From Phyllobates terribilis (taxonomy: Eukaryota), in the NCBI RefSeq assembly GCF_046119375.1, contig NW_027362764.1, forward strand, positions 799,366,001 to 799,430,000: 64,000 nt of DNA, written 5' to 3'. Shown here in pieces: positions 1,727 to 41,692 of the stretch (position 1 is the stretch's first letter; each line of letters opens with the position of its first letter). Both the position numbers and the translations under genes were made by a program. The notes below the pieces were generated by a model, which worked only from the letters and a program-made list of their open reading frames with translations, was not told the DNA's origin and made no database searches.

Positions 1727-2116
1727 GTAGGCATACAATATTATATGGGGGTATACAGTAGTATATTGAGGGTATATGGCACAGAAGTCCAGTGGGAGAG
1801 GACACTATACGGGGAAAATCCTCCAGAGAGCCCGTTATTATTCTTATTACTTATTATAACACCATTTATTCCATGGCTTTACATGTTCCAAGTGTGTAAA
1901 ATTCTCACCATCAAAATCAAGAAGTGAAGGATTTCACAGGATCAGGAGATAAATACAAGGGATCTTATTGATCCCCTGAGCACTGGATCCTCCACTATAT
2001 GGAGCGACTATAGGAGGAGCCTAATGTATACACTACTGGTGTCATATATACAGCGTATAGGACACAGCATCAGGAAGTATTCACACTGGCACCGGCTCTT
2101 ATCAGGAGGATGTGGT

Positions 2117-2132
2117 GGCTCTCAAAAGAGCC
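2117..2132 (-). promoter_or_regulatory. Histone 3' stem-loop (H2A unit A) with downstream HDE-like AAGAGC
   Basis: Minus strand GGCTCT-TTTG-AGAGCC, then ACCAC, then ATAAGAGCC. Confidence 0.9.
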
Positions 2133-6000: not shown

Positions 6001-8224
6001 CATCATCAGCAGCGCTCCATCCTCTGCACTGCGTCATCAGCAGCAGCAGCGCTCCATCTTCTGCACTGCCCATCATCAGCAGCTCTCCATCCTCTGCACT
6101 GCGCCATCAACAGCAGCGCTCCATCCTCTGCACTGCGCCATCATCAGCAGCGCTCCATCCTCTGCACTGCGTCATCAACAGCAGCTCTCCATCCTCTGCA
6201 CTGCGCCATCATCAGCAGCGCTCCATCCTCTGCACTGCGTCATCAGCAGCAGCAGCGCTCCATCCTCTGCACTGCCCATCATCAGCAGCGCTCCATCCTC
6301 TGCACTGCCCATCATCAGCAGCTCTCCATCCTCTGCACTGCGCCATCAGCAGCAGCGCTCCATCCTCTGCACTGCGCCATCATCAGCAGCGCTCCATCCT
6401 CTGCACTGCATCATCAACAGCAGCCCTCCATCCTCTGCACTGCGTCATCAGCAGCAGCGCTCCATCCTCTGCACTGCGCCATCATTATCAGCAGCGCTCC
6501 ATCCTCTGCACTGCCCATCAGCAGCAGCGCTCCATCCTCTGCACTGCGCCATCAGCAGCGCTCCATCCTCTGCACTGCGTCATCAGCAGCAGCAGCGCTC
6601 CATCCTCTGCACTGCCCATCATCAGCAGCCCTCCATCCTCTGCACTGCGCCATCATCAGCAGCAGCGCTCCATCCTCTGCACTGCCCATCATCAGCAGCT
6701 CTCCATCCTCTGCACTGCGCCATCAGCAGCAACGCTCCATCCTCTGCACTGCGCCATCATCAGCAGCGCTCCATCCTCTGCACTGCATCATCAACAGCAG
6801 CCCTCCATCCTCTGCACTGCATCATCATCAGCAGCGCTCCATCCTCTGCACTGCGCCATCATCAGCAGCAGCGCTCCATCCTCTGCACTGCCCATCAGCA
6901 GCAGCGCTCCATCCTCTGCACTACGTCATCAACAGCAGCCCTCCATCCTCTGCAGTGCGTCATCAGCAGCAGCGCTCCATCCTCTGCACTGCATCATCAG
7001 CAGCAGCGCTCCATCCTCTGCACTGCACCATCATCAGCAGCGCTCCATCCTCTGCACTACGTCATCAGCAGCAGCCCTCCATCCTCTGCAGTGCGTCATC
7101 AGCAGCAGCCCTCCATCCTCTGCACTGCGCCATCATCAGCAGCCCTCCATCCTCTGCACTGCGTCATCATCAGCAGCGCTCCATCCTCTGCACTGCCCAT
7201 CATCAGCAGCGCTCCATCCTCTGCACTGCCCATCATCAGCAGCGCTCCATCCTCTGCACTGCCCATCATCATCAGCGCTTAATCCTCTGCACTGCGTCAT
7301 CAACAGCAGCGCTCCATCCTCTGCAGTGCGTCATCAGCAGCAGCGCTCCATCCTCTGCACTGCGCCATCATCAGCAGCAGCGCTCCATCCTCTGCACTGT
7401 GTCATCATCAGCAGCGCTCTATCTTCAGCACTGCGTCATCATCAGCAGCGCTGCATCCTCTACACTGTGTCAGCAGTAGCAGCGCTCCATCCTCTGCACT
7501 GCCCATCATCAGCAGCGCTCCATCCTCTGCACTGCGTCATCAGCAGCAGCGCTCCATCCTCTGCACTGCGCCATCACCATCAGCAGCGCTCCATCCTCTG
7601 TACTGCGTCATCATCAGCAGCGCTCCATCCTCTGTACTGCGTCATCATCAGCAGCGCTCCATCCTCTGCACTGCGTCATCATCAGCAGCAGCGCTCTATC
7701 CTCTACACTGTGTCAGCAGCAGCTGCGCTCCATCCTCTGCAGTGCGTCATCAGCAGCAGCGCTCCATCCTCTGCACTGCGCCGTCATCAGCAGCAGCGCT
7801 CCATCCTCTGCACTGTGTCATCATCAGCAGCAGCGCTCCATCCTCTGCACTGTGTCATCATCAGCAGCGCTCCATCTTCAGCACTGCGTCATCATCAGCA
7901 GCGCTCCATCCTCTACACTGTGTCAGCAGCAGCAACGCTCCATCCTCTGCACTGCCCATCATCAGCAGCGCTCCAGCCTCTGCAGTGCGTCATCAGCAGC
8001 AACGCTCCATCCTCTGCACTGCCCATCATCAGCAGCGCTCCAGCCTCTGCAGTGCGTCAGCAGCAGCAACGCTCCATCCTCTGCACTGCCCATCATCAGC
8101 AGCGCTCCATCCTCAGTAATGCGTCATCATCAGCAGCGCTCCATCCTCTAAACTGTGTCAGCAGCAGCAGCGCTCCATCCTCTACACTGTGTCAGCAGCA
8201 GCAGCGCTCCATCCTCTGCACTGC
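3008..8224. repeat. About 5.2-kb compound minisatellite, core CTCCATCCTCTGCACTGC plus variable (CAT)n(CAG)n linker, unit about 30-39 bp
   Basis: Directly visible tandem array, more diverged beyond about 7200. Confidence 0.97.
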
Positions 8225-8927: not shown

Positions 8928-11900
8928 TAGTGTTGAGCGAGCACTAAAATGCTCGGGTGCTCGAAGCTCGGGCCGAGCTCGCCGTGATACTCGGGTGCTC
9001 GACCCGAGCAACGAGCCCAATGTTAGTCTATGGGAGACTCGAGCATTTTTGCGGCGGCACCCCCGGCAGTCTGTAGAAATGACAGTGCTCAAAAGACATG
9101 GGGACAGCATGGGCATCGCCCCAGGAAGCATTTCTGACCCCCAGGTCACTGCTGTCAACAACGTGGCCAGAGGTATTAAGCCACTTTTGCGGGCTCACAA
9201 TAAAACGTTCAAAAACTAAACTGAAACTGCTTTTCTGTGAAATATGTTAAGTAATTTCCTTTCCAGGGTAAAGACTTGTGTATAAGGTAAAATAAATAAC
9301 CAAAAACAAAAATACTCCTCCACACCTTGGGCTATGTTCACAAGTAGCATTTTTTATGCGTTTTTGCACTTTTGTATTGCTTTCAACCGTGACAAATGCA
9401 TTCACCGGGAAATGTCGTTTTAACATTTTACAACCTTATCTGGCCATGTGCTGTGTGACACATGCATAAAGTGCTGAAAAGACATGGGAACAGCATGAGG
9501 AAGACCCCAGGAAGCATCTCTGACTCCCAGGTCACTGCCTAAAAGTGTGCCCATCAGAAGTGATCCTTTCCGCATCAGAAGATGCAGACTTGCAACTATC
9601 CCCATGCAAGTCCTTGTCCCAGGGCAGTGTTCAATTGTACCTCCCCCATTCCTTGCAATGCAAGCGCAAGAATGCAGCCAACCACCCACCTACCCGCAGG
9701 TTGCAATTCCATACTGCTAGCTCCACTTGAAATGGGGCCTTTTAGTTTGGAGGAGGCTGAAGCGGGCCACTACCTCATGGCTGCTTCGGCAGCGAGGTAT
9801 CCATACTCAGTCCCCAGCCGCCCGGCGGCCGGGTGTCCACGCTCGGTCCCCAGCCGCCAGGGGGCGGCCGGGGGTCCACGCTCGGTCTCCAGCCGCCAGG
9901 AGGCGGCCGGGTGTCCATAAACGGTCCCCAGCCGCCCCTATTTCTCATTGGAACAACCCCCCACACACTTTTCTTAGCCCAGCCTGCTTTAGGGCAGCAT
10001 TGGACGAGCCCACCAGAGAACCAGACTCCTCCGGTGGGCCCTGGCTTCTCCATCAGGGGAGTTGAGAGTGCCAAGGTGAGGAGCATGATGATGATGATAG
10101 AAGTTAGCATCTGCTTTGTTTTCTTGGAATGCAAGCGCATGTATGTAGTAGCGGCTAGGCCTGAGGTGGTCAGCGTTTTGGCGCATATCCTACCTCCTCT
10201 GAGGATTGCTGGATGTTTTCCTGCTACTATCCAAGTTCTATGACTCCCGTTAAAACAAAGCTTCAGGTGATAAATGATGGATGAGGTGGTGGCAAAGGAG
10301 AAAGAGCAGGAGGAACAGGGACCATTCACATCAATATCAGGCCAGTCAACCACACATGTCTTGTAGGATATGTTTCTGTACCAAAAGGAGCGGTTCGGCT
10401 ACACAGTTATAGGGCATACAGTGAGTGCAATGCCTACCAAAAATTTCGAGGCACTCCAATGCCCCTTGGAAGTGACATGGAGGTCCGAGGATCTTAACTA
10501 AACCGTTTTTTCCATTTATAGCAACTGGGTCTCCTGTGCACTGTTGGCCTAAGCAGTGAATGGAAGGCTTTCAAAAAATTATGAGGAACTGCAATGCCCC
10601 TTGAAACACACGTGGATTACAGAGTACTAAAAACCTTGTACCCATTATTGGGGAGTGGGTCTCCCTTAGTTTTCGCATTTGCATTGAAAAGCAAAAGCTG
10701 ACTAAAATTAGGAGGAAATGCAATGCCCGTTGGAAGAAACGTGGAGGTTAGAGGTAATTAAAAACAACTTTTCAATGCCCCTCAGAAGAGCTGTGGAGTT
10801 CAGAGTGGTTTAACAAGACGGTTTTAATGCCCCTTGGAAAAGTGGTGGAGGTCACAGTAGCTTAACAAGACGCTTTTAATGCCCCTTACAAGAGCCATAC
10901 AGTACAGCATCTTAAAAACATTATTCCCATTATTGGGGAGTGGGTCTCCCGTAGTCTTTGCTTATGACTTCCAAGCAAAAGCTGCCAAAAATAAGAACGG
11001 GGGAACTTGCAATAATGGCAACACGGACAACGGTCACCCTGGTGGTATAGTGGTGGTGGAGGCTGAGGATAAGAACATAAAACAGCCGAAATAGGTGTGA
11101 AGCGGTGCATGTAAATACACCTCCTGAAATAACACAGTGGATTTGACTTTATTTTACTCTGCTGTCATTTGGTGGTGATGAGAAGTCTGGCCCAATCCAG
11201 CCCTTGTTCATTTTGATAAGGGTCAGCTTGTCAGCATTTTCAGTTGACAGGCGGATGCGCTTATCAGTTATAATTCCCCCAGCAGCACTAAAAACACGCT
11301 CCGATAACACGCTAGCGGCAGGGCAGGCCAGGACCTCCAAGGCATAGAGAGCAAGTTCATTCCAAGTGTCCAGCTTGGATACAGAATAATTAAAAGGCAC
11401 AGAGGAACCACGGAGGACGCTGGTACGGTCGGCAAGGTACTCCGTCACCATCTTTTGAAACTTTCCACTCATTGTGAGAGTACCCCGCGCCTCAGGGCCT
11501 GTAAGCTGGGCGGGTCTCAGAAAACTGTCCCAGAATATTGACAGTGTTCCCCTGCCTCTGCTCGATTGGAGTTGCATCTCTCTCGCTTGTACGCCTTGGT
11601 TGGGCAACGAACTGTGACCTCTGCCGCTAGCGTGTTCAGTTGGGAATTTTTTCTGCAGCAAGGGCCTTCTGGTACTGCCCCATTTTTGTAGACCTCTCCA
11701 CCTCAGGAATAAGAGAGTGAAAGTTCTCCTTGTAGCGGGGGTCTAAAAGTGTCACCAACCAGTAATGACTGTCACCCAACATTTTGACAACGCGAGGGTC
11801 ACGGTTAAGGCAGGGTAACAAAGTCAGCCATGCATGACAGACTGGTAATGGGCAAGACTTCCGTGTCCTCACCAAGATGACGACTGACCATGCTCTCCTC

Positions 11901-13589
11901 CTCCCCCCCCCCCCCGTCTTCAGGCCACCCACGCTGAACCGACGGTATGACAGTTGTACAGGTACTATCGTCTACAGCGCATGATAGCAGCTCCTGTTCT
12001 TCCTCCTCCTCCTCTCCCTCATTGTCCCCCAATGCACGTTGGGATGAGATGAGGCTGGGCTGTGTGTAATCGCCCACTACGGCTTCTTGATCCATCTCAT
12101 CATACTCTGGCTGCAATGCCTGCTCTTTAATTCTCTGTAGAGAGCGTTGCAAAAGACAGACAAGTGGGATGCTGACACTAATGATGGCGTCATCGCCACT
12201 CACCATCTTGGTGGACTCCTCAAAGTTTGTCAAGATGGTACATATGTCAGACATCCAGGTCCACTCCTGAGGTCTTATGTGTGGAGTCTGACCTGAATAT
12301 CGATAGCTTTGTTGCAGCTGGTACTCCACAACTGCTCTCTTCTGCTCACAAATCCTTTGCAACATGTGGAGGGTAGAGTTCCAACGTGTGGGGACATCAC
12401 ACACCAGTCGGTGTGCCGGAAGCTGCAAACGCTGCTGCAACACAGCAATAGTGGCGGAAGCTGTAGCCGACTTCCGAAAATGAGCAGACAGGCGGCGTAC
12501 TTTCACGAGCAGATCTGGCAACTCGGGGTACGATTTAAGAAACCACTGAACCACGAGGTTAAGCACATGAGCCAGGCATGGTATGTGTGTGATCTCGCCT
12601 CGCCTCAGAGCCGCCACCAGGTTACAGCCATTGTCACACACGACCATGCCTGGATGTAGGTTCAGCGGTCTCATCCACAGATCTGCCTGCTCTTTTACAG
12701 CTGTCCACAACTCACAAGCAGTGTGAGGTTTCTCACCTAAGCTTATGAGTTTCAGATCAGCCTGTTGCCGCTTGGCTGAGGCAGTACTGCAGTGCTTCCA
12801 GCTTGCAACTGATGTGGTGATATCTGAGATGGAGGCTGAACATGAGGAGGAGGAGGATGCGCAGGAGCTGTACACTGTGGGGGCAACTCTGACTGACATA
12901 GGGCCCGCAATCCTCGGTGTGGGGAGGATGTGTTCCGTCCCAAGGTCCGACTGGGTCCCGCCTTTCACTATGTTTACCCAGTGTGCCGTCAGGGAGATGT
13001 ACCGTCCCTGGCCACAAGCACTTGTCCACGTGTCTGTTGTCAGGTGGACTCTCCCAGTAACTGCGTTGTTGAGGGCACGGCAGATGCTTTGGGACACGTG
13101 CTTGTGTAGTGCGGGGATGGCACACCGGGCAAAAAAAGTACTGGGGACCGAGTACCGAGGGACGGCCACCGCCATAAGGTTGCGGAAGGATTCCGTCTCC
13201 ACCAGCCTAAAAGGCAGCATTTCCAACGCAAGCAGTCGTGAAATGTGCGAATTTAGGACTGTGGCCTGTGGGGCGTTAGCTGCCAATTTGCGCTTTCGTT
13301 CAAAGCTCTGGGATATGGACAATTCAACCCTGCGGTGGGACGTGGACATGGACGTTGATGCTGTTTCTTGAGAAACTGCCATAACAAGTGAAGACTGAGA
13401 GGAGGGGGCATCTTTACATGCAGTATGGACAGGGGATTGCCTTGCACACACAACAGGGGGCTCTATTGCATGCACAACAGCGGAAGAAGCAGTGGTGACA
13501 CCCGCTGACACTGGTCGTGGACCCTGGGGTTCGTCCCACAAAGTCGGGTGCTTTGCTGCCATGTGCCTGATCATGCTGGTGGTGGTCAG
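8928..13589 (-). mobile_element. hAT DNA transposon, 5'-truncated
   Basis: Terminus TAGTGTTGAGCG at 8928 and transposase remnants. The other end is lost at the junction with a piggyBac-like fragment. Confidence 0.85.
11149..13589 (-). pseudogene. Frameshifted hAT transposase
   Basis: BED-finger tail TTTSMIRHMAAKHP, HLTTDTW, CLAHVLNLVV, DVPTRWNST and dimerisation motif ALEVLACPAASVLSERVFS. Split over ORFs 11805-13676, 11636-11932 and 11149-11661, with a frameshift at the poly-C run near 11905. Confidence 0.9.
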
Positions 13590-14426
13590 CGATCCACCCG
13601 CGGCTGTTAACATGTTAAATGCCGCTGTCAATCTCCGACAGCGGCATTTAACGCGCACTTCCGGGTAGCGCGTCATAAGCCCCGCCCATCGGCGACCCCG
13701 TCACGTGATCGCGGGTCACCGATGGGTGGGCATGACAACCCAGGGTCTACAGCAGACGCCTGTGGTTGTCATGATCTGGTCGCTATGAGCGCCACCTAGT
13801 GGTCGGCGCTCATAGCACAGGACCATTTCTGCTGCATGCAGGGGATCTGCTCGTCCCCTGCATGTAGCAGAGCCGATCGGATAAATATAAAATGCAATAA
13901 CGGGCGATCAAAACATCGGATTTACCACAAAATGTTATCAATAAAAATGTCGGCCCAGCGCGCAAAAAATAAGCCCTCACCCGGCCCCAGATCCCGAAAA
14001 ATGGAGACGCTACATGTCTCAGAAAATGGCGCTATTTTTTTTGTACCAAATTTTGGATTTTTTTTTCACCACTTACATATAAAAGAACCTATACATGTTT
14101 GGTGTCTACGAACTCGTAATGACCTGGAGAATAAGAATGGCAGCTCAGTTTCAGCATTCAGTGAACGTGGTAAAAAAATAAATAAAAAACAACTGTGGTA
14201 TTGCACTTTTTTTGCAATATTACCGCACTTGGAACTTTTTTCCCGTTTTCCCGTATATGATATGGTAAAACTAGTAATGGCGTTGAATAGTACAACTCGT
14301 CCCACAAAAAATAAGCCCTCACATGGCTATATTGCCCAAAAAATAAAAACGCTATGGCTCTGGGAACAAGAGGAGCAAAAAACGAAAAAGCAAAAACGGA
14401 AAAAGCTCTGGTCCTTAAGGGGTTAA
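13590..14426. mobile_element. One end of a non-autonomous piggyBac-like (TTAA) element
   Basis: Ends CCTTAAGGGG-TTAA at 14426, the same terminus type as the element at 57920-61581. Confidence 0.7.
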
Positions 14427-14635
14427 AAAAATTGCAGACTCTGGAAGACCTACCGCTTGTACTGGCAACGTCCCTCGTGTTGGTGTTACGGGGAATGGTT
14501 GCCTGCCTTCTGTCTGCGGCCACCACTCTGCTTCTTCCTGCCTGTTGGGGTACTCTGCCTCCCTCCCCCTGTGTGCTGCTCTGCATGTCCTAAGCCAGGT
14601 TGGGTCAGCTACTAGATCATCCTGCTCAGTGCAGA

Positions 14636-17503
14636 CACATGTTTCCAGGGGAGAGGAGCCGCTCAGTGCAGCCACATGTTTCCAGGGGAGAGGAGCCGCT
14701 CAGTGCAGCCACATGTTTCCAGGGGAGAGGAGCCGCTCAGTGCAGCCACATGTTCCTCGGGGAGAGGAGCCGCTCAGTGCAGCCACATGTTCCTCGGGGA
14801 GAGGAGCCGCTCAGTGCAGCCACATGTTCCTCAGGGAGAGGAGCCGCTCAGTGCAGCCACATGTTCCTCGGAGAGGAGCCGCCACATGTTCCCAGGGGAG
14901 AGGAGCCGCTCAGTGCAGCCACATGTTCCTCGGGGAGAGGAGCCGCTCAGAGCAGCCACATGTTCCCAGTGGAGAGGAGCCGCTCAGTGCAGCCACATGT
15001 TCCTCGGGGAGAGGATCCGCTCAGTGCAGCCACATGTTCCTCGGGGAGAGGAGCCGCTCAGTGCAGCCACATGTTCCCAAGGGAGAGGAGCCGCTCAGTG
15101 CAGCCACATGTTTCCAGGGGAGAGGAGCCGCTCAGTGCAGCCACATGTTTCCAGGGGAGAGGAGCCGCTCAGTGCAGCCACATGTTTCCAGGGGAGAGGA
15201 GCCGCTCAGTGCAGCCACATGTTCCTCGGGGAGAGGAGCCGCTCAGTGCAGCCACATGTTCCTCGGGGAGAGGAGCCGCTCAGTGCAGCCACATGTTCCT
15301 CGGAGAGGAGCCGCCACATGTTCCCAGTGGAGAGGAGCCGCTCAGTGCAGCCACATGTTCCTCGGGGAGAGGAGCCGCTCAGAGCAGCCACATGTTCCCA
15401 GTGGAGAGGAGCCGCTCAGTGCAGCCACATGTTCCTCGGGGAGAGGATCCGCTCAGTGCAGCCACATGTTCCTCGGGGAGAGGAGCCGCTCAGTGCAGCC
15501 ACATGTTCCCAAGGGAGAGGAGCCGCTCAGTGCAGCCACATGTTTCCAGGGGAGAGGAGCCGCTCAGTGCAGCCACATGTTTCCAGGGGAGAGGAGCCGC
15601 TCAGTGCAGCCACATGTTCCTCGGGGAGAGGAGCCGCTCAGTGCAGCCACATGTTCCTCGGGGAGAGGAGCCGCTCAGTGCAGCCACATGTTCCTCGGAG
15701 AGAGGAGCCGCCACATGTTCCCAGGGTAGAGGAGCCGCTCAGTGCAGCCACATGTTCCTCGGGGAGAGGAGCCGCTCAGAGCAGCCACATGTTCCCAGTG
15801 GAGAGGAGCCGCTCAGTGCAGCCACATGTTCCTCGAGGAGAGGATCCGCTCAGTGCAGCCACATGTTCCTCGGGGAGAGGAGCCGCTCAGTGCAGCCACA
15901 TGTTTCCAGGGGAGAGGAGCCGCTCAGTGCAGCCACATGTTCCTCGGGGAGAGGAGCCGCTCAGTGCAGCCACATGTTCCTCGGGGAGAGGAGCCGCTCA
16001 GTGCAGCCACATGTTCCTCGGAGAGAGGAGCAGCCACATGTTCCTCGGAGAGAGGAGCCGCCACATGTTCCCAGGGGAGAGGAGCCGCTCAGTGCAGCCA
16101 CATGTTTCCAGGGGAGAGGAGCCGCTCAGTGCAGCCACATGTTCCTCGGGGAGAGGAGCCGCTCAGTGCAGCCACATGTTCCTCGGGGAGAGGAGCCGCT
16201 CAGTGCAGCCACATGTTCCTCGGAGAGAGGAGCAGCCACATGTTCCTCGGAGAGAGGAGCAGCCACATGTTCCCAGGGGAGAGGAGCCGCTCAGTGCAGC
16301 CACATGTTCCTCGGGGAGAGGAGCCGCTCAGAGCAGCCACATGTTCCCAGTGGAGAGGAGCCGCTCAGTGCAGCCACATGTTCCCAGTGGAGAGGAGCTG
16401 CTCAGTGCAGCCACATGTTCCTCGGGGAGAGGAGCCGCTCAGTGCAGCCACATGTTCCCAGGGGAGAGGAGCCGCTCAGTGCAGCCACATGTTTCCAGGG
16501 GAGAGGAGCCGCTCAGTGCAGCCACATGTTCCTCGGGGAGAGGAGCCGCTCAGTGCAGCCACATGTTCCTCGGGGAGAGGAGCCGCCACATGTTCCCAGG
16601 GGAGAGGAGCCGCTAAGAGCAGCCACATGTTCGCAGTGGAGAGGAGCCGCTCAGAGCAGCCACATGTTCCCAGTGGAGAGGAGCCGCTCAGAGAAGCCAC
16701 ATGTTCCCAGTGGAGAGGAGCCGCTCAGTGCAGCCACATGTTCCTCGGGGAGAGGATCCGCTCAGTGCAGCCACATGTTCCTCGGGGAGAGGAGCCGCTC
16801 AGAGCAGCCACATGTTCCCAGTGGAGAGGAGCCGCTCAGTGCAGCCACATGTTCCCAGTGGAGAGGAGCCGCTCAGTGCAGCCACATGTTCCCAGTGGAG
16901 AGGAGCCGCTCAGTGCAGCCACATGTTCCTCGGGGAGAGGAGCCGCTCAGAGCAGCCACATGTTCCCAGTGGAGAGGAGCCGCTCAGTGCAGCCACATGT
17001 TCCCAGTGGAGAGGAGCCGCTCAGTGCAGCCACATGTTCCTCGGGGAGAGGAGCCGCTCAGAGCAGCCACATGTTCCCAGTGGAGAGGAGCCGCTCAGTG
17101 CAGCCACATGTTCCCAGTGGAGAGGAGCCGCTCAGTGCAGCCACATGTTCCCAGGGGAGAGGATCCGCTCAGTGCAGCCACATGTTCCTCGGGGAGAGGA
17201 GCCGCTAAGTGCAGCCACATGTTCCCAGGGGAGAGGAGCCGCTCAGTGCAGCCACATGTTCCTCGGAGAGAGGAGCCGCCACATGTTCCTCGGGGAGAGG
17301 AGCCGCTCAGAGCAGCCACATGTTCCCAGTGGAGAGGAGCCGCTCAGAGCAGCCACATGTTCCCAGTGGAGAGGAGCCGCTCAGTGCAGCCACATGTTCC
17401 TCGGAGAGAGGAGCCGCCACATGTTCCTCGGGGAGAGGAGCCGCTCAGAGCAGCCACATGTTCCCAGTGGAGAGGAGCCGCTCAGAGCAGCCACATGTTC
17501 CCA
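14636..17503. repeat. About 2.9-kb 37-bp minisatellite GAGGAGCCGCTCAGTGCAGCCACATGTTCCTCGGGGA
   Basis: Directly visible tandem array with 38-bp and deleted variants. It abuts the H3 downstream spacer at ccagttataaag. Confidence 0.97.
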
Positions 17504-17662
17504 GTTATAAAGCTGCATACAGGTCGCATCACTGGGCTCAGCTCCATCACAGGCATAATCTGACAGCAACCGCAGCAGTGAGAACAGCACCGACATCCCG
17601 CAGCCCAGGCCGCTTCTGAGGGATCAGAGTAATAGAGATCAGCTCGTCTTGGAGGATTTGGT

Positions 17663-19205: not shown

Positions 19206-19690
<485 letters not shown>

Positions 19691-19926
19691 CAGTTGGTGA
19701 TTTTGAATTTCCCGCTCATTGTGCTGTAATTTTCCGGCTTCTCTCCTCATCTCGGGGCCGCTGCTGCTCGGAGACTGGAGATCCTGCCTGCTCCAATAAT
19801 GACAGCGGGAGATCCAGGCTGGAAATAGATCAATCTCTGGGAGATCATCATCGATCAGACGCCTCCACCGGCCTGGAGAGCGAAGGGTGTGTGACATCAG
19901 AGGGAAATCAGCGGAAAAGTGGATAT

Positions 19927-20050
19927 AGCTCAGTGGGTATAATCCCTTCTATTAGGGTTTAGCTCAGTGGGTATAATCCCTTCTATTAGTGTTTAGCTCA
20001 GTGGGTATAATCCCTTCTATTAGGGTTTAGCTCAGTGGACATAATCCTTT
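19927..20050. repeat. 34-bp tandem repeat AGCTCAGTGGGTATAATCCCTTCTATTAGGGTTT, about 3.5 copies (2 in unit B)
   Basis: Unit starts at 19927, 19961, 19995 and 20029. Confidence 0.85.
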
Positions 20051-20091
20051 CTGCATATAATCATCTATTAGTGCTTGGCACAGTAGCTATA

Positions 20092-20444
20092 ATCATACAG
20101 CTCTGCAGTCACAAGGTGGTGACACTGATCATACAGCTCTGCGGGGAGAAGGTGGTGGCACTGATCATACAGCTCTGCAGTGACAAGGTGGTGGCACTGA
20201 TCATACAGCTCTGCAGTGACAAGGTGGTGACACTGATCATACAGCTCTGCAGTGACAAGGTGGTGACACTGATCATACAGCTCTGCAGTGACAAGGTGGT
20301 GACACTAATCATACAGCTCTGCAGTGACAAGGTGGTGACACTAATCATACAGCTCTGCTGGGACAAGGTGGTGACACTGCTCATACAGCTCTGCTGGGAC
20401 AAGGTGGTGGCACTGCTCATACAGCTCTGCTGGGACAAGGTGGT
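20092..20444 (-). repeat. 36-bp tandem array (10 copies) of the H1 cleavage site plus HDE (U7-binding) segment
   Basis: Unit ATCATACAGCTCTGCAGTGACAAGGTGGTGACACTG at 36-bp spacing, directly abutting the H1 stem-loop. On the mRNA strand it reads CCACCTTGTC...GCAGAGCTGTAT. Confidence 0.9.
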
Positions 20445-20460
20445 GGCTCTGATAAGAGCC
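20445..20460 (-). promoter_or_regulatory. Histone 3' stem-loop (H1 unit A), UAUC loop
   Basis: GGCTCT-TATC-AGAGCC then ACCAC. Confidence 0.9.
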
Positions 20461-20489
20461 TTTGTGGTAGGAGGACAGAGCGGCTCCGC

Positions 20490-21131
20490 TTATTTCTTGG
20501 CCGCGGGCTTCTTGGCTTTAGTTGCCTTCTTAGCCGGACTCTTGGCAGCTTTTGGTTTGGCCGCCTTCTTAGCAGGGCTCTTAGTCACCTTCTTGGGCTT
20601 CGGAGCGGCCTTCGGCTTCTTGGGGCTCTTGGTTGCTTTCTTGGCCGCGGCTGCTGCGGGCTTCTTGGCCTTTTTCGGACTTTTCTTGGCCGCGGTCGGA
20701 GCCTTCTTGGGCTTCTTTGGGGATTTTGCCGCGGGTTTCTTGGGTTTGGCAGCAGCCGCCGGCTTCTTCTTGGCCGGCTTGTCCTTGGTCTCCTGTTTCT
20801 TGTTCAGCTTGAAGGAGCCGGAGGCGCCGCTGCCCTTCACCTGGAGCAGGGACTCCTTGGCGACCAGAGTCCTGACGGCCTGCTTCAGGCGGCTGTTGTT
20901 CTTCTCCACATCGTACCCGCCGGCAGCCAGAGCCTTCTTCAGGGCGGCCAGAGACACCCCGCTGCGCTCCTTAGAGGCGGACACGGCTTTCACGATCAGA
21001 TCGGACACGCTGGGACCGGAGGATTTCTTGCTCTTTTTGGCGCCCCCTGCGGCGGATTTCTTCGACTGCTTCTTGGCTTTGCCGGCCGGTTCGGCGGGAG
21101 GAGGAGCGGCGGCTGGCGCGGTCTCTGCCAT
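20490..21131 (-). CDS. H1: Linker histone H1, 213 aa
   Basis: [11 protein letters not shown]..., globular domain [45 protein letters not shown]...[13 protein letters not shown]-rich tail. Confidence 0.97.
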
Positions 21132-21189
21132 TGTGTGATGAGGAACAGACACAAGAATCTTCTGGAAGGAAAACACTGAGGACGGAGCT

Positions 21190-21660: not shown

Positions 21661-22783
21661 CACAGACGGCGGCTCCGCTCCCTGCAGCTCCTCTCCTGTT
21701 ATATATATATATATCCAGTGTGTGCAGAGTATGGGGGACACAGGCGGCTCCTCTCCCTGCAGCTCCTCTCCTGTTATACCTATATCCAGTGTGTGCAGTG
21801 TATGGGGGACACAGGCGGCTCCTCTCCCTGCAGCTCCTCTCCTGTTATATATATATCCAGTGTGTGCAGTGTATGGGGGACACAGGCGGCTCCTCTCTCT
21901 GCAGCTCCTCTCCTGTTATATATATATCCAGTGTGTGCAGTGTATGGGGGACACAGGCGGCTCCTCTCCCTGCAGCTCCTCTCCTGTTATATATATATCC
22001 AGTGTGTGCAGTGTATGGGGGACACAGGCGGCTCCTCTCCCTGCAGCTCCTCTCCTGTTATATATATCCAGTGTGTGCAGAGTATGGGGGACACAGGCGG
22101 CTCCTCTCCTTGCAGCTCCTCTCCTGTTTTATATATATATATATATATCCAGTGTGTGCAGTGTATGGAGGACACAGGCGGCTCCTCTCCCTGCAGCTCC
22201 TCTCCTGTTATATATATCCAGTGTGTGCAGTGTATGGGGGACACAGACGGCTCCGCTCCCTGCAGCTCCTCTCCTGTTATATATATATATCCAGTGTGTG
22301 CAGTGTATGGGGGGACACAGGCGGCCCCCCCCCCCTGCAGCTCCTCTCCTGTTATATATATATATCCAGTGTGTGCAGTGTATGGGGGACACAGGCGGCT
22401 CCGCTCCCTGCAGCTCCTCTCCTGTTATATATATATATCCAGTGTGTGCAGTGTATGGGGGACACAGGCGACTCCGCTCCCTGCAGCTCCTCTCCTGTTA
22501 TATATATCCAGTGTGTGCAGTGTATGGGGGACACAGGCGGTTCCTCTCCCTGCAGCTCCTCTCCTGTTATATATATATATCCAGTGTGTGCAGTGTATGG
22601 GGGACACAGGCGGCTCCGCTCCCTGCAGCTCCTGTCCTGTTATATATATATATATCCAGTGTGTGCAGTGTATGGGGGACACAGGCGGCTCCGCTCCCTG
22701 CAGCTCCTCTCCTGTTATATATATATCCAGTGTGTGCAGTGTATGGGGGACACAGGCGGCTCCACTCCCTGCAGCTCCTCTCC

Positions 22784-22819
<36 letters not shown>

Positions 22820-23131
22820 ATATATATCTATCCAGTGTGTGCAGTGTATGGGGGACACAGGCGACTCCGCTCCCTGCAGCTCCTCTCCTGTTATATATAT
22901 CCAGTGTGTGCAGTGTATAGGGGACACAGGCGGTTCCTCTCCCTGCAGCTCCTCTCCTGTTATATATATCCAGTGTGTGCAGTGTATGGGGGACACAGGC
23001 GACTCCGCTCTCTGCAGCTCCTCTCCTGTTATATATATATATATCCAGTGTGTGCAGTGTATGGGGGACACAGGCGGCTCCGCTCCCTGCAGCTCCTCTC
23101 CTGTTATATATATATCCAGTGTGTGCAGTGT
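21661..23131. repeat. H1-upstream minisatellite: about 61-bp fixed core plus variable (TA)n
   Basis: TCCAGTGTGTGCAGTGTATGGGGGACACAGGCGGCTCCGCTCCCTGCAGCTCCTCTCCTGT(TA)n. Further tracts at 23951-24173, 30603-32369, 40483-41692, 42740-43042 and 44669-44787. Confidence 0.96.
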
Positions 23132-23950: not shown

Positions 23951-24173
23951 TATATATATCCAGTGTGTGCAGTGTATGGGGGACACAGGCGGCTCCGCTC
24001 CTTGCAGCTCCTCTCCTGTTATATATATATCCAGTGTGTGCAGTGTATGGGGGACACAGGCGACTCCGCTCCCTGCAGCTCCTCTCCTGTTATATATATA
24101 TATATCCAGTGTGTGCAGTGTATGGGGGACACAGGCGACTCCGCTCCCTGCAGCTCCTCTCCTGTTATATATA

Positions 24174-25354
24174 CAGTACAGACCAAAAGTTTGGACACAC
24201 CTTTTCATTTAAAGATTTTTCTGTATTTTCATGACTATGAAAATTGTACATTCACACTGAAGGCATCAAAACTATGAATTACCACATGTGGAATTATATA
24301 CTTAACAAAAAAGTGTGAAACAACTGAAAATATGTCTTATATTCTAGGTTCTTCACAGTAGCCACCTTTTGCTTTGATGACTGCTTTGCACACTCTTGGC
24401 ATTCTCTTGATGAGCTTCAAGAGGTAGTCACCGGAAATGGTTTTCCAACAATCTTGAAGGAGTTCCCAGAGATGCTTAGCACTTGTTGGCCCTTTTGCCT
24501 TCACTCTGCGGTCCAGCTCATCCCAAACCATCTCGATTGGGTTCAGGTCTGGTGACTGTGGAGGCCAGGTCATCTGGCGTAGCCCCCCATCACTCTCCTT
24601 CTTGGTCAAATAGCCCTTACACAGCCTGGAGATGTGTTTGGGGTCATTGTCCTGTTGAAAAATAAATGATGGTCCAACTAAACGCAAACCGGATGGAATA
24701 GCATGCCGCTGCAAGATGCTGTGGTAGCCATGCTGGTTCAGTATGCCTTCAATTTTGAATAAATCCCCAACAGTGTCACCAGCAAAGCCCCCCCACACCA
24801 TCACACCTCCTGCTCCATGCTTCACGGTGGGAACCAGGCATGTAGAGTCCATCCGTTCACCTTTTCTCCGTCGCACAAAGACACGGTGATTGGAAATAAA
24901 AATCTCAAATTTGGACTCATCAGACCAAAGCACAGATTTCCACTGGTCTAATGTCCATTCCTTGTGTTCTTTAGCCCAAACAAGTCTCTTCTGCTTGTTG
25001 CCTGTCCTTAGCAGTGGTTTCCTAGCAGCTATTTTACCATGAAGGCCTGCTGCACAAAGTCTCCTCTTAACAGTTGTTGTAGAGATGTGTCTGCTGCTAG
25101 AACTCTGTGTGGCATTGACCTGGTCTCGAATCTGAGCTGCTGTTAACCTGCGATTTCTGAGGCTGGTGACTCGGATAAACTTATCCTCAGAAGCAGAGGT
25201 GACTCTTGGTCTTCCTTTCCTGGGGCAGTCCTCATGTGAGCCAGTTTCTTTGTAGCGCTTGATGGTTTTTGCAACTGCACTTGGGGAAACTTTCAAAGTT
25301 TGGCCAATTTTTCGGACTGACTGACCTTCATTTCTTAAAGTAATGATGGCCACT
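24174..25354 (-). mobile_element. Tc1 (DD34E) copy missing its 5' TIR and first about 12 codons; remaining ORF open (24337-25353)
   Basis: TA-CAGTACAGACCAAAAGTTTGG terminus; 338-aa ORF with WSDESKF, QQDNDPKH, SPDLNPIE. Confidence 0.93.
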
Positions 25355-25587
25355 CATGGCACTTCTTGCCATCCTGCTTCCCACGGAAAAATCCGCATCA
25401 TGGGCACAGCACATGCGGATTTCAATTGGGGAACATTGCTGCCCTTCTACCATGCGTTTTTAATGCTTTTCCGCAACTGCAAAAACGCCGCGGAAACGCA
25501 TTAAAAACGCATCATGTGAACTCAACCTAATACACACTATAGGAGACAGATGATCGGCGGCACCGGCTCTTATCAGGAGGATGTGGT

Positions 25588-25603
25588 GGCTCTTAAAAGA
25601 GCC
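25588..25603 (-). promoter_or_regulatory. Histone 3' stem-loop (H2A unit B)
   Basis: GGCTCT-TTTA-AGAGCC. Confidence 0.88.
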
Positions 25604-28872: not shown

Positions 28873-29432
28873 TTATATAGAGTGTGAGCGGACCGGAACG
28901 AGAACCGCAGGGATGATGCGTTTCCGGGGCGAGATTTGATACTAAATTTGCATTATCAGCTCCTCCCCTTCTCTCTGATTGGCTGAACACAGATCAGTTG
29001 GTGATTTTGAATTTCCCGCTCATTGTGCTGTAATTTTCCCGCTTCTCTCCTCATCTCGGCGCCGCTGCTGCTCGGAGACTGGAGATCCTGCCTGCTCCAA
29101 TAATGACAGCGGGAGATCCAGGCTGGAAATAGATCAATCTCTGGGAGATCATCATCGATCAGACGCCTCCACCGGCCTGGAGAGCGAAGGGTGTGTGACA
29201 TCAGAGGGAAAGTGAAAGTGGATATAGCTCAGTGGGTATAATCCCTGCTATTGGTGTTTAGCTCAGTGGGTATAATCCTTTCTGCATATAATCATCTATT
29301 AGTGCTTGGCACAGTAGCTATAATGATACTGCTCTGCAGAGATAAGGTGGTGGCACTGATCATACAGCTCTGCAGGAACAAGGTGGTGGCTCTGATAAGA
29401 GCCTTTGTGGTAGGAGGACAGAGCGGCTCCGC

Positions 29433-30074
29433 TTATTTCTTGGCCGCGGGCTTCTTGGCTTTAGTTGCCTTCTTAGCCGGACTCTTGGCAGCTTTTGGTT
29501 TGGCCGCCTTCTTAGCAGGGCTCTTAGTCACCTTCTTGGGCTTCGGAGCGGCCTTCGGCTTCTTGGGGCTCTTGGTTGCTTTCTTGGCCGCGGCTGCTGC
29601 GGGCTTCTTGGCCTTTTTCGGACTTTTCTTGGCCGCGGTCGGAGCCTTCTTGGGCTTCTTTGGGGATTTTGCCGCGGGTTTCTTGGGTTTGGCAGCAGCC
29701 GCCGGCTTCTTCTTGGCCGGCTTGTCCTTGGTCTCCTGCTTCTTGTTCAGCTTGAAGGAGCCGGAGGCGCCGCTGCCCTTCACCTGGAGCAGGGACTCCT
29801 TGGCGACCAGAGTCCTGACGGCCTGCTTCAGGCGGCTGTTGTTCTTCTCCACATCGTAGCCTCCGGCAGCCAGAGCCTTCTTCAGGGCGGCCAGAGACAC
29901 CCCGCTGCGCTCCTTAGAGGCGGACACGGCTTTCACGATCAGCTCGGACACGCTGGGACCGGAGGATTTCTTGCTCTTCTTGGCGCCACCTGCGGCGGAT
30001 TTCTTCGGCTGCTTCTTGGCTTTGCCGGCCGGTTCGGCGGGAGGAGGAGCGGCGGCTGGCGCGGTCTCTGCCAT
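29433..30074 (-). CDS. H1: Linker histone H1, unit B
   Basis: Differs from unit A at KKQPKK/KKQSKK and VSELI/VSDLI; stem-loop at 29388-29403. Confidence 0.97.
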
Positions 30075-30602: not shown

Positions 30603-31568
30603 ACACAGACGGCGGCTCCGCTCCCTGCAGCTCCTCTCCTGTTATACCTATATCCAGTGTCTGCAGAGTATGGGGGACACAGGCGGCTCCTCTCCCTGCA
30701 GCTCCTCTCCTGTTATATATATATATATATATATCCAGTGTGTGCAGTGTATGGGGGGACACAGGCGGCTCCGCTCCCTGCAGCTCCTCTCCTGTTATAT
30801 ATATATATCCAGTGTGTGCAGTGTATGGGGGACACAGGCGGCTCCTCTCCCTGCAGCTCCTCTCCTGTTATATATATGCAGTGTATGGGGGGACACAGGC
30901 GGCCCCCCCCTGCAGCTCCTCTCCTGTTATATATATATATATCCAGTGTGTGCAGTGTATGGGGGACACAGGCGGCTCCGCTCCCTGCAGCTCCTCTCCT
31001 GTTATATATATATATCCAGTGTGTGCAGTGTATGGGGGACACAGGCGGCTCCTCTCCCTGCAGCTCCTCTCCTGTTATATATATATCCAGTGTGTGCAGT
31101 GTATGGGGGACACAGGCGGCTCCGCTCCCTGCAGCTCCTCTCCTGTTATATATATCCAGTGTGTGCAGTGTATGGGAGACACAGGCGGCTCCGCTCCCTG
31201 CTGCTCCTCTCCTGTTATATCTATATCCAGTGTGTGCAGTGCATGGAGCACACAGGCTCCGCTCCCTGCAGCTCCTCTCCTGTTATATATATATATCCAG
31301 TGTGTGCAGTGTATAGGGGACACAGGCTCCGCTCCCTGCAGCTCCTCTCCTGTTATATATATATATATCTAGTGTGGGCAGTGTATGGAGGAACACAGGC
31401 GGCTCCGCTCCCTGCAGCTCCTCTCCTGTTACATATATATATCCAGTGTGTGCAGTGTATGGGGGACACAGGCGGCTCCTCTCCCTGCAGCTCCTCTCCT
31501 GTTATATATATCCAGTCTGTGCAGAGTATGGGGGACACAGGCGGCTCCTCTCCTTGCAGCTCCTCTCC

Positions 31569-31629
<61 letters not shown>

Positions 31630-32369
31630 CAGTGTGTGCAGTGTATGGGGGACACAGGCGGCTCCTCTCCCTGCAGCTCCTCTCCTGTTATATATATCCA
31701 GTGTGTGCAGTGTATGGGGGACACAGACGGCTCCGCTCCCTGCAGCTCCTCTCCTGTTATATATATATATATATATATATCCAGTGTGTGCAGTGTATGG
31801 GGGGACACAGGCGGCTCCCCCCCCCCGCAGCTCCTCTCCTGTTATATATATATATCCAGTGTGTGCAGTGTATGGGGGACACAGACGGCTCCGCTCCCTG
31901 CAGCTCCTCTCCTGTTATATATATATATTCAGTGTGTGCAGTGTATGGGGGGACACAGGCGGCTCCCCCCCCCTGCAGCTCCTCTCCTGTTATATATATA
32001 TTCAGTGTGTGCAGTGTATGGGGGACACAGGCGGCTCCTCTCCTTGCAGCTCCTCTCCTGTTTTATATATATATATATATATATATCCAGTGTGTGCAGT
32101 GTATGGGGGACACAGGCGGCTCCGCTCCCTGCAGCTCCTCTCCTGTTATATATATATCCAGTGTGTGCAGTGTATAGGGGACACAGGCTCCGCTCCCTGC
32201 AGCTCCTCTCCTGTAATATATATATCCAGTGTGTGCAGTGTATGGGGGACACAGGCGGCTCCTCTCCCTGCAGCTCCTCTCCTGTTATATATATATATAT
32301 CTTGTGTGGGCAGTGTATGGAGGAACACAGGCGGCTCCGCTCCCTGCAGCTCCTCTCCTGTTATATATA
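30603..32369. repeat. H1-upstream (TA)n minisatellite, unit B tract
   Basis: Same unit as 21661-23131. Confidence 0.96.
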
Positions 32370-40482: not shown

Positions 40483-41692
40483 CACAGACGGCGGCTCCTC
40501 TCCCTGCAGCTCCTCTCCTGTTATATCTATATCCAGTGTGTGCAGTGTATGGGGGACACAGGCTCCGCTCCCTGCAGCTCCTCTCCTGTTATATATATAT
40601 ATATATATCCAGTGTGTGTAGTGTATGGGGGACACAGGCGGCTCCTCTCCCTGCAGCTCCTCTCCTGTTATATATATATATCCAGTGTGTGCAGTGTATG
40701 GGGGACACAGGCGGCTCCTCTCCCTGCAGCTCCTCTCCTGTTATATATATTTATCCAGTGTGTGCAGTGTATGGGGGACACAGGCGGCTCCTCTCCCTGC
40801 AGCTCCTCTCCTGTTATATATATATCCAGTGTGTACACTGTATGTGGTACACAGGCGGCTCCGCTAATTGCAGCTCCTCTCCTGTTATATATATCCAGTG
40901 TGTGCAGTGTATGGGGGACACACGCGGCTCCTCTCCTTGCAGCTCCTCTCCTGTTATATATATATATATATATATATATCCAGTGTGTGCAGTGTATGGG
41001 GGACACAGGCGGCTCCGCTAATTGCAGCTCCTCTCCTGTTATATATATCCAGTGTGTGCAGTGTATGGGGGACACAGGCGGCTCCTCTCCCTGCAGCTCC
41101 TCTCCTGTTATATATATATCCAGAGTGTACACTGTATGTGGTACACAGGCGGCTCCGCTCCCTGCAGCTCCTCTCCTGTTATATATATATATCCAGTGTG
41201 TGCAGTGTATGGGGGACACAGGCGGCTCCGCTCCCTGCAGCTCCTCTCCTGTTATATATATATATATATCCAGTGTGTACAGTGTATGGGGGACACAGGC
41301 GGCTCCTCTCCCTGCAGCTCCTCTCCTGTTATATATATATCCAGTGTGTACACTGTATGTGGTACACAGGCGGCTCCGCTCCCTGCAGCTCCTCTCCTGT
41401 TATATATATATATCCAGTGTGTGCAGTGTATGGGGGACACAGGCGGCTCCACTCCCTGCAGCTCCTCTCCTGTTATATATATATCCAGTGTGTACAGTGT
41501 ATGGGGGACACAGGAGGCTGCGCTCCCTGCAGCTCCTCTCCTGTTATATATATATCCAGTGTGTGCAGTGTATGTGGGACACAGGAGGCTCCGCTCCCTG
41601 CAGCTCCTCTCCTATTATATATATCCAGTGTGTACAGTGTATGGGGGACACAGGCGGCTCCACTCTCTGCAGCTCCTCTCCTGTTATATATC

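What the first reader, a model, noticed from the sequence alone, without database searches (positions are those of the whole stretch)
20092..20444. Tandem array of ten histone-downstream (U7 snRNA-binding) elements behind H1
Seen: the 36-bp unit is exactly the stretch from the ACCAC cleavage flank through the HDE. It is repeated 10 times in unit A but only twice in unit B (about 29322-29387), and there is a single stem-loop. Each unit has TACAGCTCT on the plus strand, identical to the 5' region of vertebrate U7 (...GUUACAGCUCUUUU, recalled), so the RNA carries AGAGCUGUA ten times. Established: U7 pairing to the HDE recruits CPSF73 cleavage and degradation of the downstream product. Inference: a multimerised U7 landing strip that could act as a fail-safe terminator protecting the co-oriented H4 promoter about 500 bp downstream, a U7 sink, or a source of alternative H1 3' ends. 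Neutral slippage is also possible.
Basis: partly seen in the sequence, partly recalled or inferred. Interest (0 to 1): 0.8.

Follow-up and report, generated by a model that had tools for sequence, protein, structure and literature searches.

The report
Histone H1 processing-signal minisatellite
Behind one histone H1 gene of the golden poison frog, the short signal that tells the cell where to cut the H1 message has been copied ten times in a row. The copies are real and could still bind the cutting machinery, but they most likely arose as a by-product of a repeat-prone genome and are not a working device.

Summary
H1 lies on the minus strand (CDS 21131->20490). A single canonical histone stem-loop (20460->20445) is followed by ten in-phase 36-bp units (20444->20085). 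Each unit carries ACCACC, a 10-nt spacer and AGAGCTGTA. That 9-mer pairs perfectly with the 5' end of human and mouse U7 snRNA (-14 to -15 kcal/mol). The paralogous H1 9 kb away has two units, and the core of its second unit is mutated.

Function is not supported. Units 2-10 have no stem-loop. The two histone repeat units are 98% identical outside the arrays and both have intact H1 and H4 genes, yet they differ 10 to 2 in copy number. A neighbouring, unrelated 34-bp unit also differs (3.7 against about 1.7 copies). About 26% of the window is tandem array, and neighbouring copies are the most alike.

One weak hint points the other way. All 7 variable columns avoid ACCACC and the core (p about 0.01-0.1).

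My best reading is a young, probably neutral minisatellite seeded by the H1 3' processing signal, in which only unit 1 works. I found no paper describing this. The scan has already found the same family on other DNA of this genome (Phyllobates terribilis), up to 43.8 kb. This is a small member of that family, but it offers a clean natural comparison of 10 against 2 copies.

The parts
20490..21131 (-). Histone H1 coding sequence (213 aa plus stop)
   Evidence: ORF. Pfam Linker_histone PF00538, E 2.1e-22. The nearest named relatives are Phyllobates terribilis and Ranitomeya H1.
20445..20460 (-). The only histone 3' stem-loop of this gene (GGCTCTTATCAGAGCC)
   Evidence: Pattern search. Rfam RF00032 match at 20419-20465, 33.7 bits against a gathering score of 34, E 1.4e-7. 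It is the only helix kept in the centroid fold.
20409..20444 (-). Unit 1: ACCACC cleavage flank, 10-nt spacer, HDE core AGAGCTGTA (20420-20428). This is the presumed working processing signal.
   Evidence: It lies directly after the stem with canonical spacing, the core starting 17 nt after the stem. It forms a 9-bp duplex with the U7 5' region, -15.1 kcal/mol.
20085..20408 (-). Units 2-10: nine further copies of the same 36-nt unit, each with ACCACC and an intact AGAGCTGTA but no stem-loop
   Evidence: Duplex energy is -14.0 to -15.1 kcal/mol for every unit. There is no RF00032 match here.
19926..20052 (.). Adjacent, unrelated 34-bp array. It has 3.7 copies here and about 1.7 in unit B, and serves as an internal control for copy-number turnover.
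   Evidence: TRF. In unit B the region 29225-29283 aligns twice to unit A. Sequence.
19206..19517 (-). Co-oriented histone H4 gene downstream of the array (TATA near 19568-19576)
   Evidence: ORF, sequence, weak Pfam histone-fold hits.
29433..30074 (-). Paralogous H1 of unit B. It is intact and differs from H1_A at 2 residues.
   Evidence: Pfam E 2.3e-22. The flanks are 98.4% identical to unit A.
29316..29403 (-). Unit B stem-loop (29388-29403) plus two 36-nt units. The first has an intact core (29363-29371). The second has AGAGCAGTA.
   Evidence: Duplex energy is -14.0 and -12.1 kcal/mol.

Best explanation
This is a young minisatellite that grew out of the 3' processing signal of a replication-dependent histone H1 gene. 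The duplicated block runs from the loop end and 3' arm of the stem through the ACCACC cleavage flank and the HDE. Replication slippage or unequal exchange has copied it to ten units here and two in the sister repeat unit. Only unit 1 sits beside the single stem-loop, so only there can SLBP and U7 snRNP cooperate, and the H1 message is cut there (inferred). Units 2-10 are at most transcribed as part of the short-lived downstream cleavage product. They can still base-pair with U7 because the array is recent and homogenised. They are not needed for H1 3'-end formation or for insulating H4. Shown: the anatomy, complementarity to mammalian U7, copy-number difference between near-identical paralogs, the same turnover in unrelated arrays, and the neighbour-similarity gradient. 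Inferred: that cutting happens only at unit 1, and that the extra units have no or negligible effect.
For: 1. Units A and B are 98.1-98.4% identical outside the arrays but carry 10 against 2 units. Both H1 ORFs and both H4 ORFs are intact.
2. The distal unit of B has lost the core (AGAGCAGTA).
3. The unrelated 34-bp array next door also differs (3.7 against about 1.7 copies). The 71-bp arrays upstream of the two H1 genes differ too (1464 against 1721 bp).
4. 16.8 kb, or 26% of the window, lies in tandem arrays, so this 360-bp array is one of the smallest.
5. The mean difference between units rises from 1.4 at lag 1 to 3-5 at lag 5 or more, the signature of local duplication.
6. Units 2-10 have no stem-loop. 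The RNA has no excess structure, z = 0.31.
7. Published assays show that a substrate with a 9-bp U7 duplex is processed below 5% even with a stem-loop, and not at all by endogenous U7 once the stem-loop is removed. SLBP-independent cleavage needs a duplex of about 15-16 bp (PMC7026596).
8. In probable RNA runs, contigs cover the H1 mRNA region up to the stem-loop and leave 19900-20075 empty. Collapsed-repeat contigs of the unit are shallow, depth 5-11 against up to about 150 on the CDS.
Against: All 7 variable columns of the ten units (columns 9, 11, 12, 14, 29, 30, 35) fall outside ACCACC and the 9-nt core. The probability is 0.014 for both elements and 0.11 for the core alone, if columns are independent and equally mutable. 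That is the pattern purifying selection on every unit would give. The columns are few, partly linked and recurrently hit. Selection on whichever unit sits first, combined with rapid shuffling, would give the same picture. One contig (X15, 20417-20565) crosses the cleavage site, so some unprocessed or read-through molecules, or DNA, exist. The runs are only guessed to be RNA, and contigs cannot show ends. The frog's own U7 was not seen.
Confidence: 0.65

Rival explanations
1. The extra units are working back-up U7 sites. A polymerase that passes the first site uncut meets nine more ACCACC-plus-HDE modules. U7 snRNP and CPSF73 cut or degrade the transcript there, end transcription and shield the co-oriented H4 promoter.
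For: Every unit keeps a perfect 9-bp match to the U7 5' region with the canonical distance from ACCACC to the core. No variable column touches ACCACC or the core (p 0.014). No AATAAA or ATTAAA lies between H1 and H4 to catch read-through. Processing is coupled to termination, and slowed processing gives read-through at histone loci (PMC4896052). U7 snRNP can cut without SLBP if pairing is strong (PMC7026596).
Against: The duplex is only 9 bp and there is no stem-loop, which is the weak class in PMC7026596. Sister unit B has the same H1-to-H4 layout with one intact HDE and an identical H4 protein. Unrelated arrays differ in copy number in the same way. The scan's notes give a copy-number range of 2 to about 1200 behind H1 genes (unverified here), which argues against a tuned number.
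Confidence: 0.2
2. The arrays act in trans. Nascent transcripts carrying many HDEs soak up U7 snRNP or concentrate it at the histone locus body, tuning histone mRNA output.
For: There are ten U7-complementary sites per transcript. The unit's collapsed-repeat contigs do appear in probable RNA runs. In human cells, HDE-like motifs in LTR12 repeats are bound and regulated by U7 (PMC11417402).
Against: In that human study, over-expressing multi-HDE lincRNAs changed neither U7 level nor histone processing. The repeat's depth in the runs is low, although the scan notes suggest thousands of genomic copies. The match to the 15-nt LTR12-type motif is only 10 of 15 by my count from the sequences. There is no direct evidence.
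Confidence: 0.07
3. The array is neutral in function, but its origin is not random. Polymerase pausing and replication-coupled transcription at histone 3' ends make the processing site a hot spot for tandem duplication. This would explain arrays behind both H1 and H2B in this genome.
For: The scan's notes list HDE arrays behind two different histone classes (unverified). A pol II pause 3' of the HDE is part of the current model (PMC4896052).
Against: H3, H4 and H2A in this window have single HDEs. A quarter of the window is tandem array of unrelated units, so no special hot spot is needed. Many H1 arrays may share one origin, spread with the histone repeat unit.
Confidence: 0.05
4. The copy number is an assembly artefact, an expansion or collapse of a short repeat.
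For: No listed contig spans the whole array. DNA runs hold only a small share of its words.
Against: The array is only 360 bp, with position-specific variants arranged in ordered blocks and clean unique flanks. A second locus shows the same junctions. Collapsed 66-nt repeat contigs in independent runs show that tandem units exist in the organism.
Confidence: 0.03

Closest known systems
Canonical replication-dependent histone 3' processing signal (stem-loop, ACCCA cleavage flank, HDE paired by U7 snRNA), as in mouse H2a (PMC7026596)
   Same: Unit 1 has all the parts in the canonical order and spacing. The stem-loop matches RF00032. The core AGAGCTGTA pairs with U7 UACAGCUCU. H2A, H3 and H4 in the window carry single HDEs matching overlapping parts of the same U7 region.
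   Different: Known histone genes are described with one HDE. Here the flank-plus-HDE block is repeated ten times head to tail, with nine copies divorced from any stem-loop.
Ordinary minisatellites (10-100 bp units with unstable copy number, arising by slippage or unequal exchange)
   Same: Shared features are the 36-bp unit, head-to-tail order, 10 against 2 copies in 98%-identical paralogs, the neighbour-similarity gradient, and a region where 26% of the DNA is such arrays.
   Different: The seed is a defined RNA-processing signal lying in a transcribed position, so every unit is a potential binding site for a low-abundance snRNP.
HDE-like motifs in human LTR12 repeats and LTR12 lincRNAs, repressed by U7 snRNA (PMC11417402)
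   Same: Both involve several U7-complementary motifs per transcript, carried by repeated DNA outside the canonical single-HDE context.
   Different: The LTR12 motif is 15 nt with at most 2 mismatches to U7 nt 2-16, it is not of histone-gene origin, and it acts on transcription through NF-Y sites. This unit has 9 contiguous matches (10 of 15 by my count) and is a direct copy of an H1 3' end.
Larger satellites of the same 36/37-bp family elsewhere in this genome (scan notes s1-230035, 43.8 kb; s1-224812, 11.7 kb; other H1 arrays of 16-48 units)
   Same: They have the same origin, the H1 processing signal. The earlier follow-ups also judged them neutral satellite DNA.
   Different: This is the small, gene-attached end of the series, still joined to a live H1 gene and its stem-loop, with a 2-unit sister locus in the same window. 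I could not read the other loci myself.
Newt (Notophthalmus) histone clusters embedded in long satellite tracts and read through on lampbrush loops (recalled from Stephenson, Diaz, Gall and co-workers, 1981; only partly checked through PMC2114352)
   Same: Both are amphibian histone clusters flanked by tandem repeats that can be transcribed by read-through from gene promoters.
   Different: The newt satellites are not reported to derive from the histone processing signal. This comparison rests on my memory, not on a test.

Membership tests
Histone 3' processing signal (stem-loop plus HDE) | Lies just 3' of a replication-dependent histone ORF and a canonical 16-nt stem-loop | tested here: met
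   Met for unit 1 only. The H1 ORF has Pfam PF00538. The stem-loop is at 20445-20460, RF00032 33.7 bits, E 1.4e-7, 0.3 bit under the gathering score.
Histone 3' processing signal (stem-loop plus HDE) | Each HDE is accompanied by its own stem-loop for SLBP | tested here: not met
   Units 2-10 have no stem-loop. They keep only a 9-nt copy of the loop end and 3' arm.
Histone 3' processing signal (stem-loop plus HDE) | Purine-rich core at canonical distance from the cleavage flank, complementary to the 5' end of U7 snRNA | tested here: met
   AGAGCTGTA starts 17 nt after the stem, or 11 nt after ACCACC. It forms 9 contiguous pairs with the human/mouse U7 5' region, -14.0 to -15.1 kcal/mol in all ten units, as good as or better than H4 (-14.3), H2A (-12.5 and -14.4) and H3 (-10.5).
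Histone 3' processing signal (stem-loop plus HDE) | Complementarity to the species' own U7 snRNA | not testable with these tools
   There is no U7 gene in the window. The Xenopus U7 paper is not held. Indirect support: all four histone classes in the window match overlapping parts of the same mammalian-type sequence.
Histone 3' processing signal (stem-loop plus HDE) | U7- and CPSF73-dependent cleavage at the site | not testable with these tools
   Only contigs were available, and they cannot show RNA ends.
Minisatellite | Head-to-tail array of a 10-100 bp unit | tested here: met
   Period 36, 10.1 copies, 94% matches, no indels, in exact phase.
Minisatellite | Unstable copy number between close paralogs or alleles | tested here: met
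   10 against 2 units in repeat units that are 98.1-98.4% identical.
Minisatellite | Neighbouring copies more alike than distant ones (local duplication) | tested here: met
   Mean differences are 1.44 at lag 1, 2.3-3.0 at lags 3-7 and 4-5 at lags 8-9.
U7-regulated HDE-like motif (LTR12 type) | 15-nt motif with at most 2 mismatches to U7 nt 2-16 | tested here: not met
   By my count from the sequences, the unit matches 10 of 15 positions (9 contiguous).

The most novel reading that the evidence does not exclude
The HDE arrays of this frog are not junk. They are a lineage-specific addition to histone gene control, rows of U7 landing sites on nascent read-through RNA. Under this reading they either enforce termination between co-oriented histone genes or concentrate scarce U7 snRNP at the histone locus. 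Selection would keep ACCACC and the U7-pairing core intact in every unit while the spacers drift.
Probability: 0.12. Interest if true: 0.8.

Novelty: new variant of a known kind. Interest (0 to 1): 0.4.

Why it matters
Histone mRNAs are the only animal mRNAs ended by U7 snRNP. I know of no description of a histone gene with more than one HDE, or of tandem HDE repeats, and three full-text searches found none. This locus shows a defined RNA-processing signal seeding a tandem repeat. According to the scan's other notes, the same repeat has grown into satellites of tens of kilobases in this genome, so this is a visible early stage of satellite birth.

The locus also supplies a natural experiment. 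Two 98%-identical H1-H4 units in one window differ mainly in carrying 10 against 2 units. Read-through, termination and H4 expression behind them can therefore be compared directly. If the extra sites turned out to work, this would be a new way of terminating or insulating tandem histone genes. If they do not, it is a clean example of functional-looking sequence made by neutral turnover.

Tried and rejected
1. I asked whether the 2.9-kb, 37-bp array at 14624-17504 descends from the H1 unit. It looks alike by eye, sharing GGAGCCGCTC with the H1 3' UTR and a CAGTGC..CCAC..TGTTCCCAG stretch. The tests disagree: a shuffled-unit null gives 0 of 500, a random-target null gives 28 of 500, and sensitive blastn finds nothing. 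I leave it as inconclusive and did not use it.
2. I tried to fetch other H1 loci to survey copy number and test constraint. Each H1 protein is on record once, in GCA_046119375.1, and no DNA is served. Three Ranitomeya imitator H1 contigs were also listed without DNA. The homolog search gave no dendrobatid Logan contigs.
3. I could not obtain the frog's own U7. It is not in the window, PMC46907 is not held, and the U7 survey gives sequences only in a figure.
4. RNA structure of the array shows nothing beyond the one histone hairpin, with z-score 0.31.
5. The neighbouring 34-bp unit begins like a tRNA A box, but ARAGORN finds no tRNA.
6. The bacterial promoter and terminator scan is irrelevant to a vertebrate and was ignored.
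7. Read laying had only contigs of runs whose RNA nature is a guess, so I claim no RNA ends, strands or levels. The array's words occur at small shares in runs of several other coded organisms. I could not lay these, so I make no claim about conservation.
8. The ORFs through the array (20109-20438 on the minus strand, 20035-21138 on the plus strand) are repeat artefacts.

Full report
**What is there**

The window is a histone gene cluster of the golden poison frog. The H1 proteins of the window are on record only in assembly GCA_046119375.1, on a contig of 816,908,810 bp. A close H1 relative on a contig of exactly that length is named Phyllobates terribilis.

All histone genes near the finding lie on the minus strand. 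In repeat unit A they are H1 (CDS 21131->20490), H4 (19517->19206), H3 (18172->17708) and, further on, H2A. Unit B, about 9 kb away, has H1 (30074->29433), H4, H3 and H2A. Both H1 products carry the linker-histone domain (E about 2e-22) and differ at two residues.

Forty-five nucleotides after the H1 stop codon comes GGCTCTTATCAGAGCC (20460->20445). It matches Rfam's histone 3' stem-loop model at 33.7 bits, E 1.4e-7, just under the gathering score of 34.

From the first base after the stem, ten units of exactly 36 nt follow without any indel (20444->20085). TRF reports period 36, 10.1 copies and 94% matches.

- Each unit reads ACCACC, then a 10-nt spacer, then AGAGCTGTA, then 11 nt.
- The 9-mer occurs 11 times in 64 kb, against 0.74 expected. 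All occurrences are behind the two H1 genes. A looser 28-nt unit pattern finds only these 12 units.
- Unit B has two units. The second has AGAGCAGTA and a further change just after the core.
- There is only one stem-loop per gene.
- H4's TATA box lies about 510 bp beyond the array, in the same orientation.

One refinement is needed. The last 9 nt of the unit (ATCAGTGCC or ATCAGTGTC) copy the loop end and 3' arm of the stem (ATCAGAGCC). The block that was first duplicated therefore began inside the hairpin, but without its 5' arm no further hairpin can form.

**Is it a U7 site?**

The human and mouse U7 sequences printed in PMC7026596 share AGUGUUACAGCUCUUUUAG upstream of the Sm site. RNAduplex gives a perfect 9-bp helix (AGAGCUGUA with UACAGCUCU) at -14.0 to -15.1 kcal/mol for all ten units and for B1. 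B2 gives -12.1 kcal/mol.

The single HDEs behind H4, H2A and H3 in the same window give -14.3, -12.5 and -14.4, and -10.5 kcal/mol. They match overlapping parts of the same U7 region at the same distance from the stem. This makes it likely, though it does not prove, that the frog's U7 has the mammalian-type 5' end. I could not obtain the frog's or a Xenopus U7. Every unit therefore has the sequence of a respectable HDE with its own cleavage flank.

**Evidence that the extra units are not needed**

- Units A and B are 98.1-98.4% identical outside tandem arrays, and both have intact H1 and H4 genes. They nevertheless carry 10 against 2 units, and B's second unit has a broken core. The H1-to-H4 arrangement evidently works with a single intact HDE.
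- The unrelated 34-bp array that abuts the HDE array has 3.7 copies in A and about 1.7 in B. The 71-bp arrays upstream of the two H1 genes measure 1464 and 1721 bp.
- In all, 16.8 kb (26%) of the window is tandem array with periods of 9 to 373 bp. Copy-number turnover here is general and not specific to U7 sites.
- Within the array, units differ more the further apart they lie: mean 1.4 differences at lag 1, and 3-5 at lag 5 or more. Each variant occupies a contiguous block of units. This is the mark of serial local duplication.
- A1 and B1, the two presumably working units, differ at 3 of 36 positions, all in spacers. That is several times the flank divergence, which suggests the units have been reshuffled since the repeat units split.

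**Biochemical plausibility**

In mouse extracts, a substrate with a normal stem-loop but only 9 uninterrupted pairs to U7 was processed below 5%. The same substrate without the stem-loop was not cut by endogenous U7. SLBP-independent cutting is seen with duplexes of 15-16 bp (PMC7026596). Units 2-10 (9 bp, no stem-loop) belong to the weak class.

After the normal cut, the downstream product is degraded 5'-3' by CPSF73. Processing is coupled to termination (PMC4896052). Steady-state RNA from units 2-10 should therefore be scarce.

The RNA fold of the array shows no structure beyond the histone hairpin (z = 0.31). No AATAAA or ATTAAA lies between H1 and H4 in either unit.

**Sequencing runs**

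Four small runs of the same species label were laid. Their RNA nature is only a guess, and only contigs were available.

- Contigs cover 20459-21175, that is the H1 message up to the stem-loop.
- Nothing lies on 19900-20075 or on the promoter side. That pattern fits RNA better than DNA.
- Sixty-six-nucleotide contigs of depth 5-11 lie on the array. This is the length expected for a collapsed perfect 36-bp repeat at k = 31. The CDS depth reaches about 150.
- One contig (X15, 20417-20565, depth 3.2) crosses the cleavage site into the first HDE.

Tandem units and some uncut molecules are therefore present, at low level. Contigs cannot show ends, strand or locus of origin. One array contig carries one extra base per unit, so it comes from a 37-bp variant elsewhere in the genome.

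**The one result that points the other way**

The seven variable columns of the ten units (9, 11, 12, 14, 29, 30, 35) all avoid ACCACC and the core. The chance of this is 0.014 for both elements and 0.11 for the core alone, if columns were independent and equally mutable.

The columns are few and partly linked. Columns 12 and 14 are also the variant positions seen in the run contigs. If units change places quickly, selection on whichever unit sits first would keep the motifs clean throughout a short array. I therefore treat this as a hint, not a finding.

**Context from the scan (unchecked AI notes, used as leads)**

The same genome has H1-attached arrays of 16, 20 and about 48 units, satellites of 11.7 and at least 43.8 kb of the same 36/37-bp family, and HDE arrays behind H2B. 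The 43.8-kb satellite lies 122 kb before this window. Two earlier follow-ups judged the large blocks to be neutral satellite DNA. I could not read those loci. My in-window tests agree with their verdict, and the wide copy-number range argues against a tuned number.

**Literature**

Full-text searches combining 'histone downstream element' with 'tandem repeat' or 'satellite DNA' returned nothing relevant. The P. terribilis draft genome paper mentions neither histones nor satellites.

The nearest published case is the 15-nt HDE-like motif in human LTR12 repeats, through which U7 represses transcription (PMC11417402). This unit does not meet that motif's definition, matching 10 of 15 positions.

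**Verdict**

The identification of the unit as cleavage flank plus HDE is right, and its capacity to pair with U7 is supported. The proposed functions are unsupported and, on balance, unlikely.

| Reading | Probability |
|---|---|
| Young neutral minisatellite seeded by the H1 processing signal | 0.65 |
| Back-up U7 sites or terminator | 0.20 |
| Action in trans on U7 | 0.07 |
| Mutational hot spot at the processing site | 0.05 |
| Assembly artefact | 0.03 |

It is a new variant of a known kind and is not described in the papers I could search. The scan has already met it repeatedly in this genome. Its particular value is the built-in comparison of 10 against 2 units.

Noticed in passing
window 14624-17504 (+): A 37-bp array of about 81 copies lies just 3' of the H3_A stem-loop and is absent from unit B. 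Its unit shares GGAGCCGCTC with the H1 3' UTR and a 22-nt stretch (16 matches) with the H1 36-bp unit, in the opposite orientation. The significance tests disagree (0 of 500 against 28 of 500), and blastn finds nothing.
   Followed up: partly
window 19926-20052: A 34-bp array abuts the HDE array, with 3.7 copies in unit A and about 1.7 in unit B. The unit begins TAGCTCAGTGGGTA, like a tRNA A box, but ARAGORN calls no tRNA.
   Followed up: partly
window 21668-23131, 23951-24173, 30649-32369, 40490-41691, 42739-43042: A 71-bp TA-containing minisatellite recurs upstream of both H1 genes and twice more in the window, with different lengths at equivalent positions.
   Followed up: no
window 3015-8224: A 34-bp array of about 151 copies (5.2 kb) lies just upstream of H2A_A, where a divergent H2B gene might be expected. 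No H2B ORF is present in either histone repeat unit of the window.
   Followed up: no
window 2088-2116 and 25559-25587 (-): Homology between the two H2A 3' flanks ends 29 nt after the stem, immediately after the presumed HDE (AAGAGCCGGTGCC). A rearrangement has spared the processing signal to the base.
   Followed up: no
window 2117-2132 and 25588-25603 (-): The two H2A stem-loops have unusual loops (TTTG and TTTA instead of TTTC or TATC). Only the unit B copy reaches the Rfam gathering score.
   Followed up: no
window 11805-13676, 24337-25353, 33990-35597, 47919-53374: By eye from the ORF list, there are long ORFs of mobile elements: a hAT-like transposase, Tc1/mariner transposases, a piggyBac-like transposase and a Gypsy-type gag-pol. 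They are interleaved with the histone units. None was checked against a family library.
   Followed up: no
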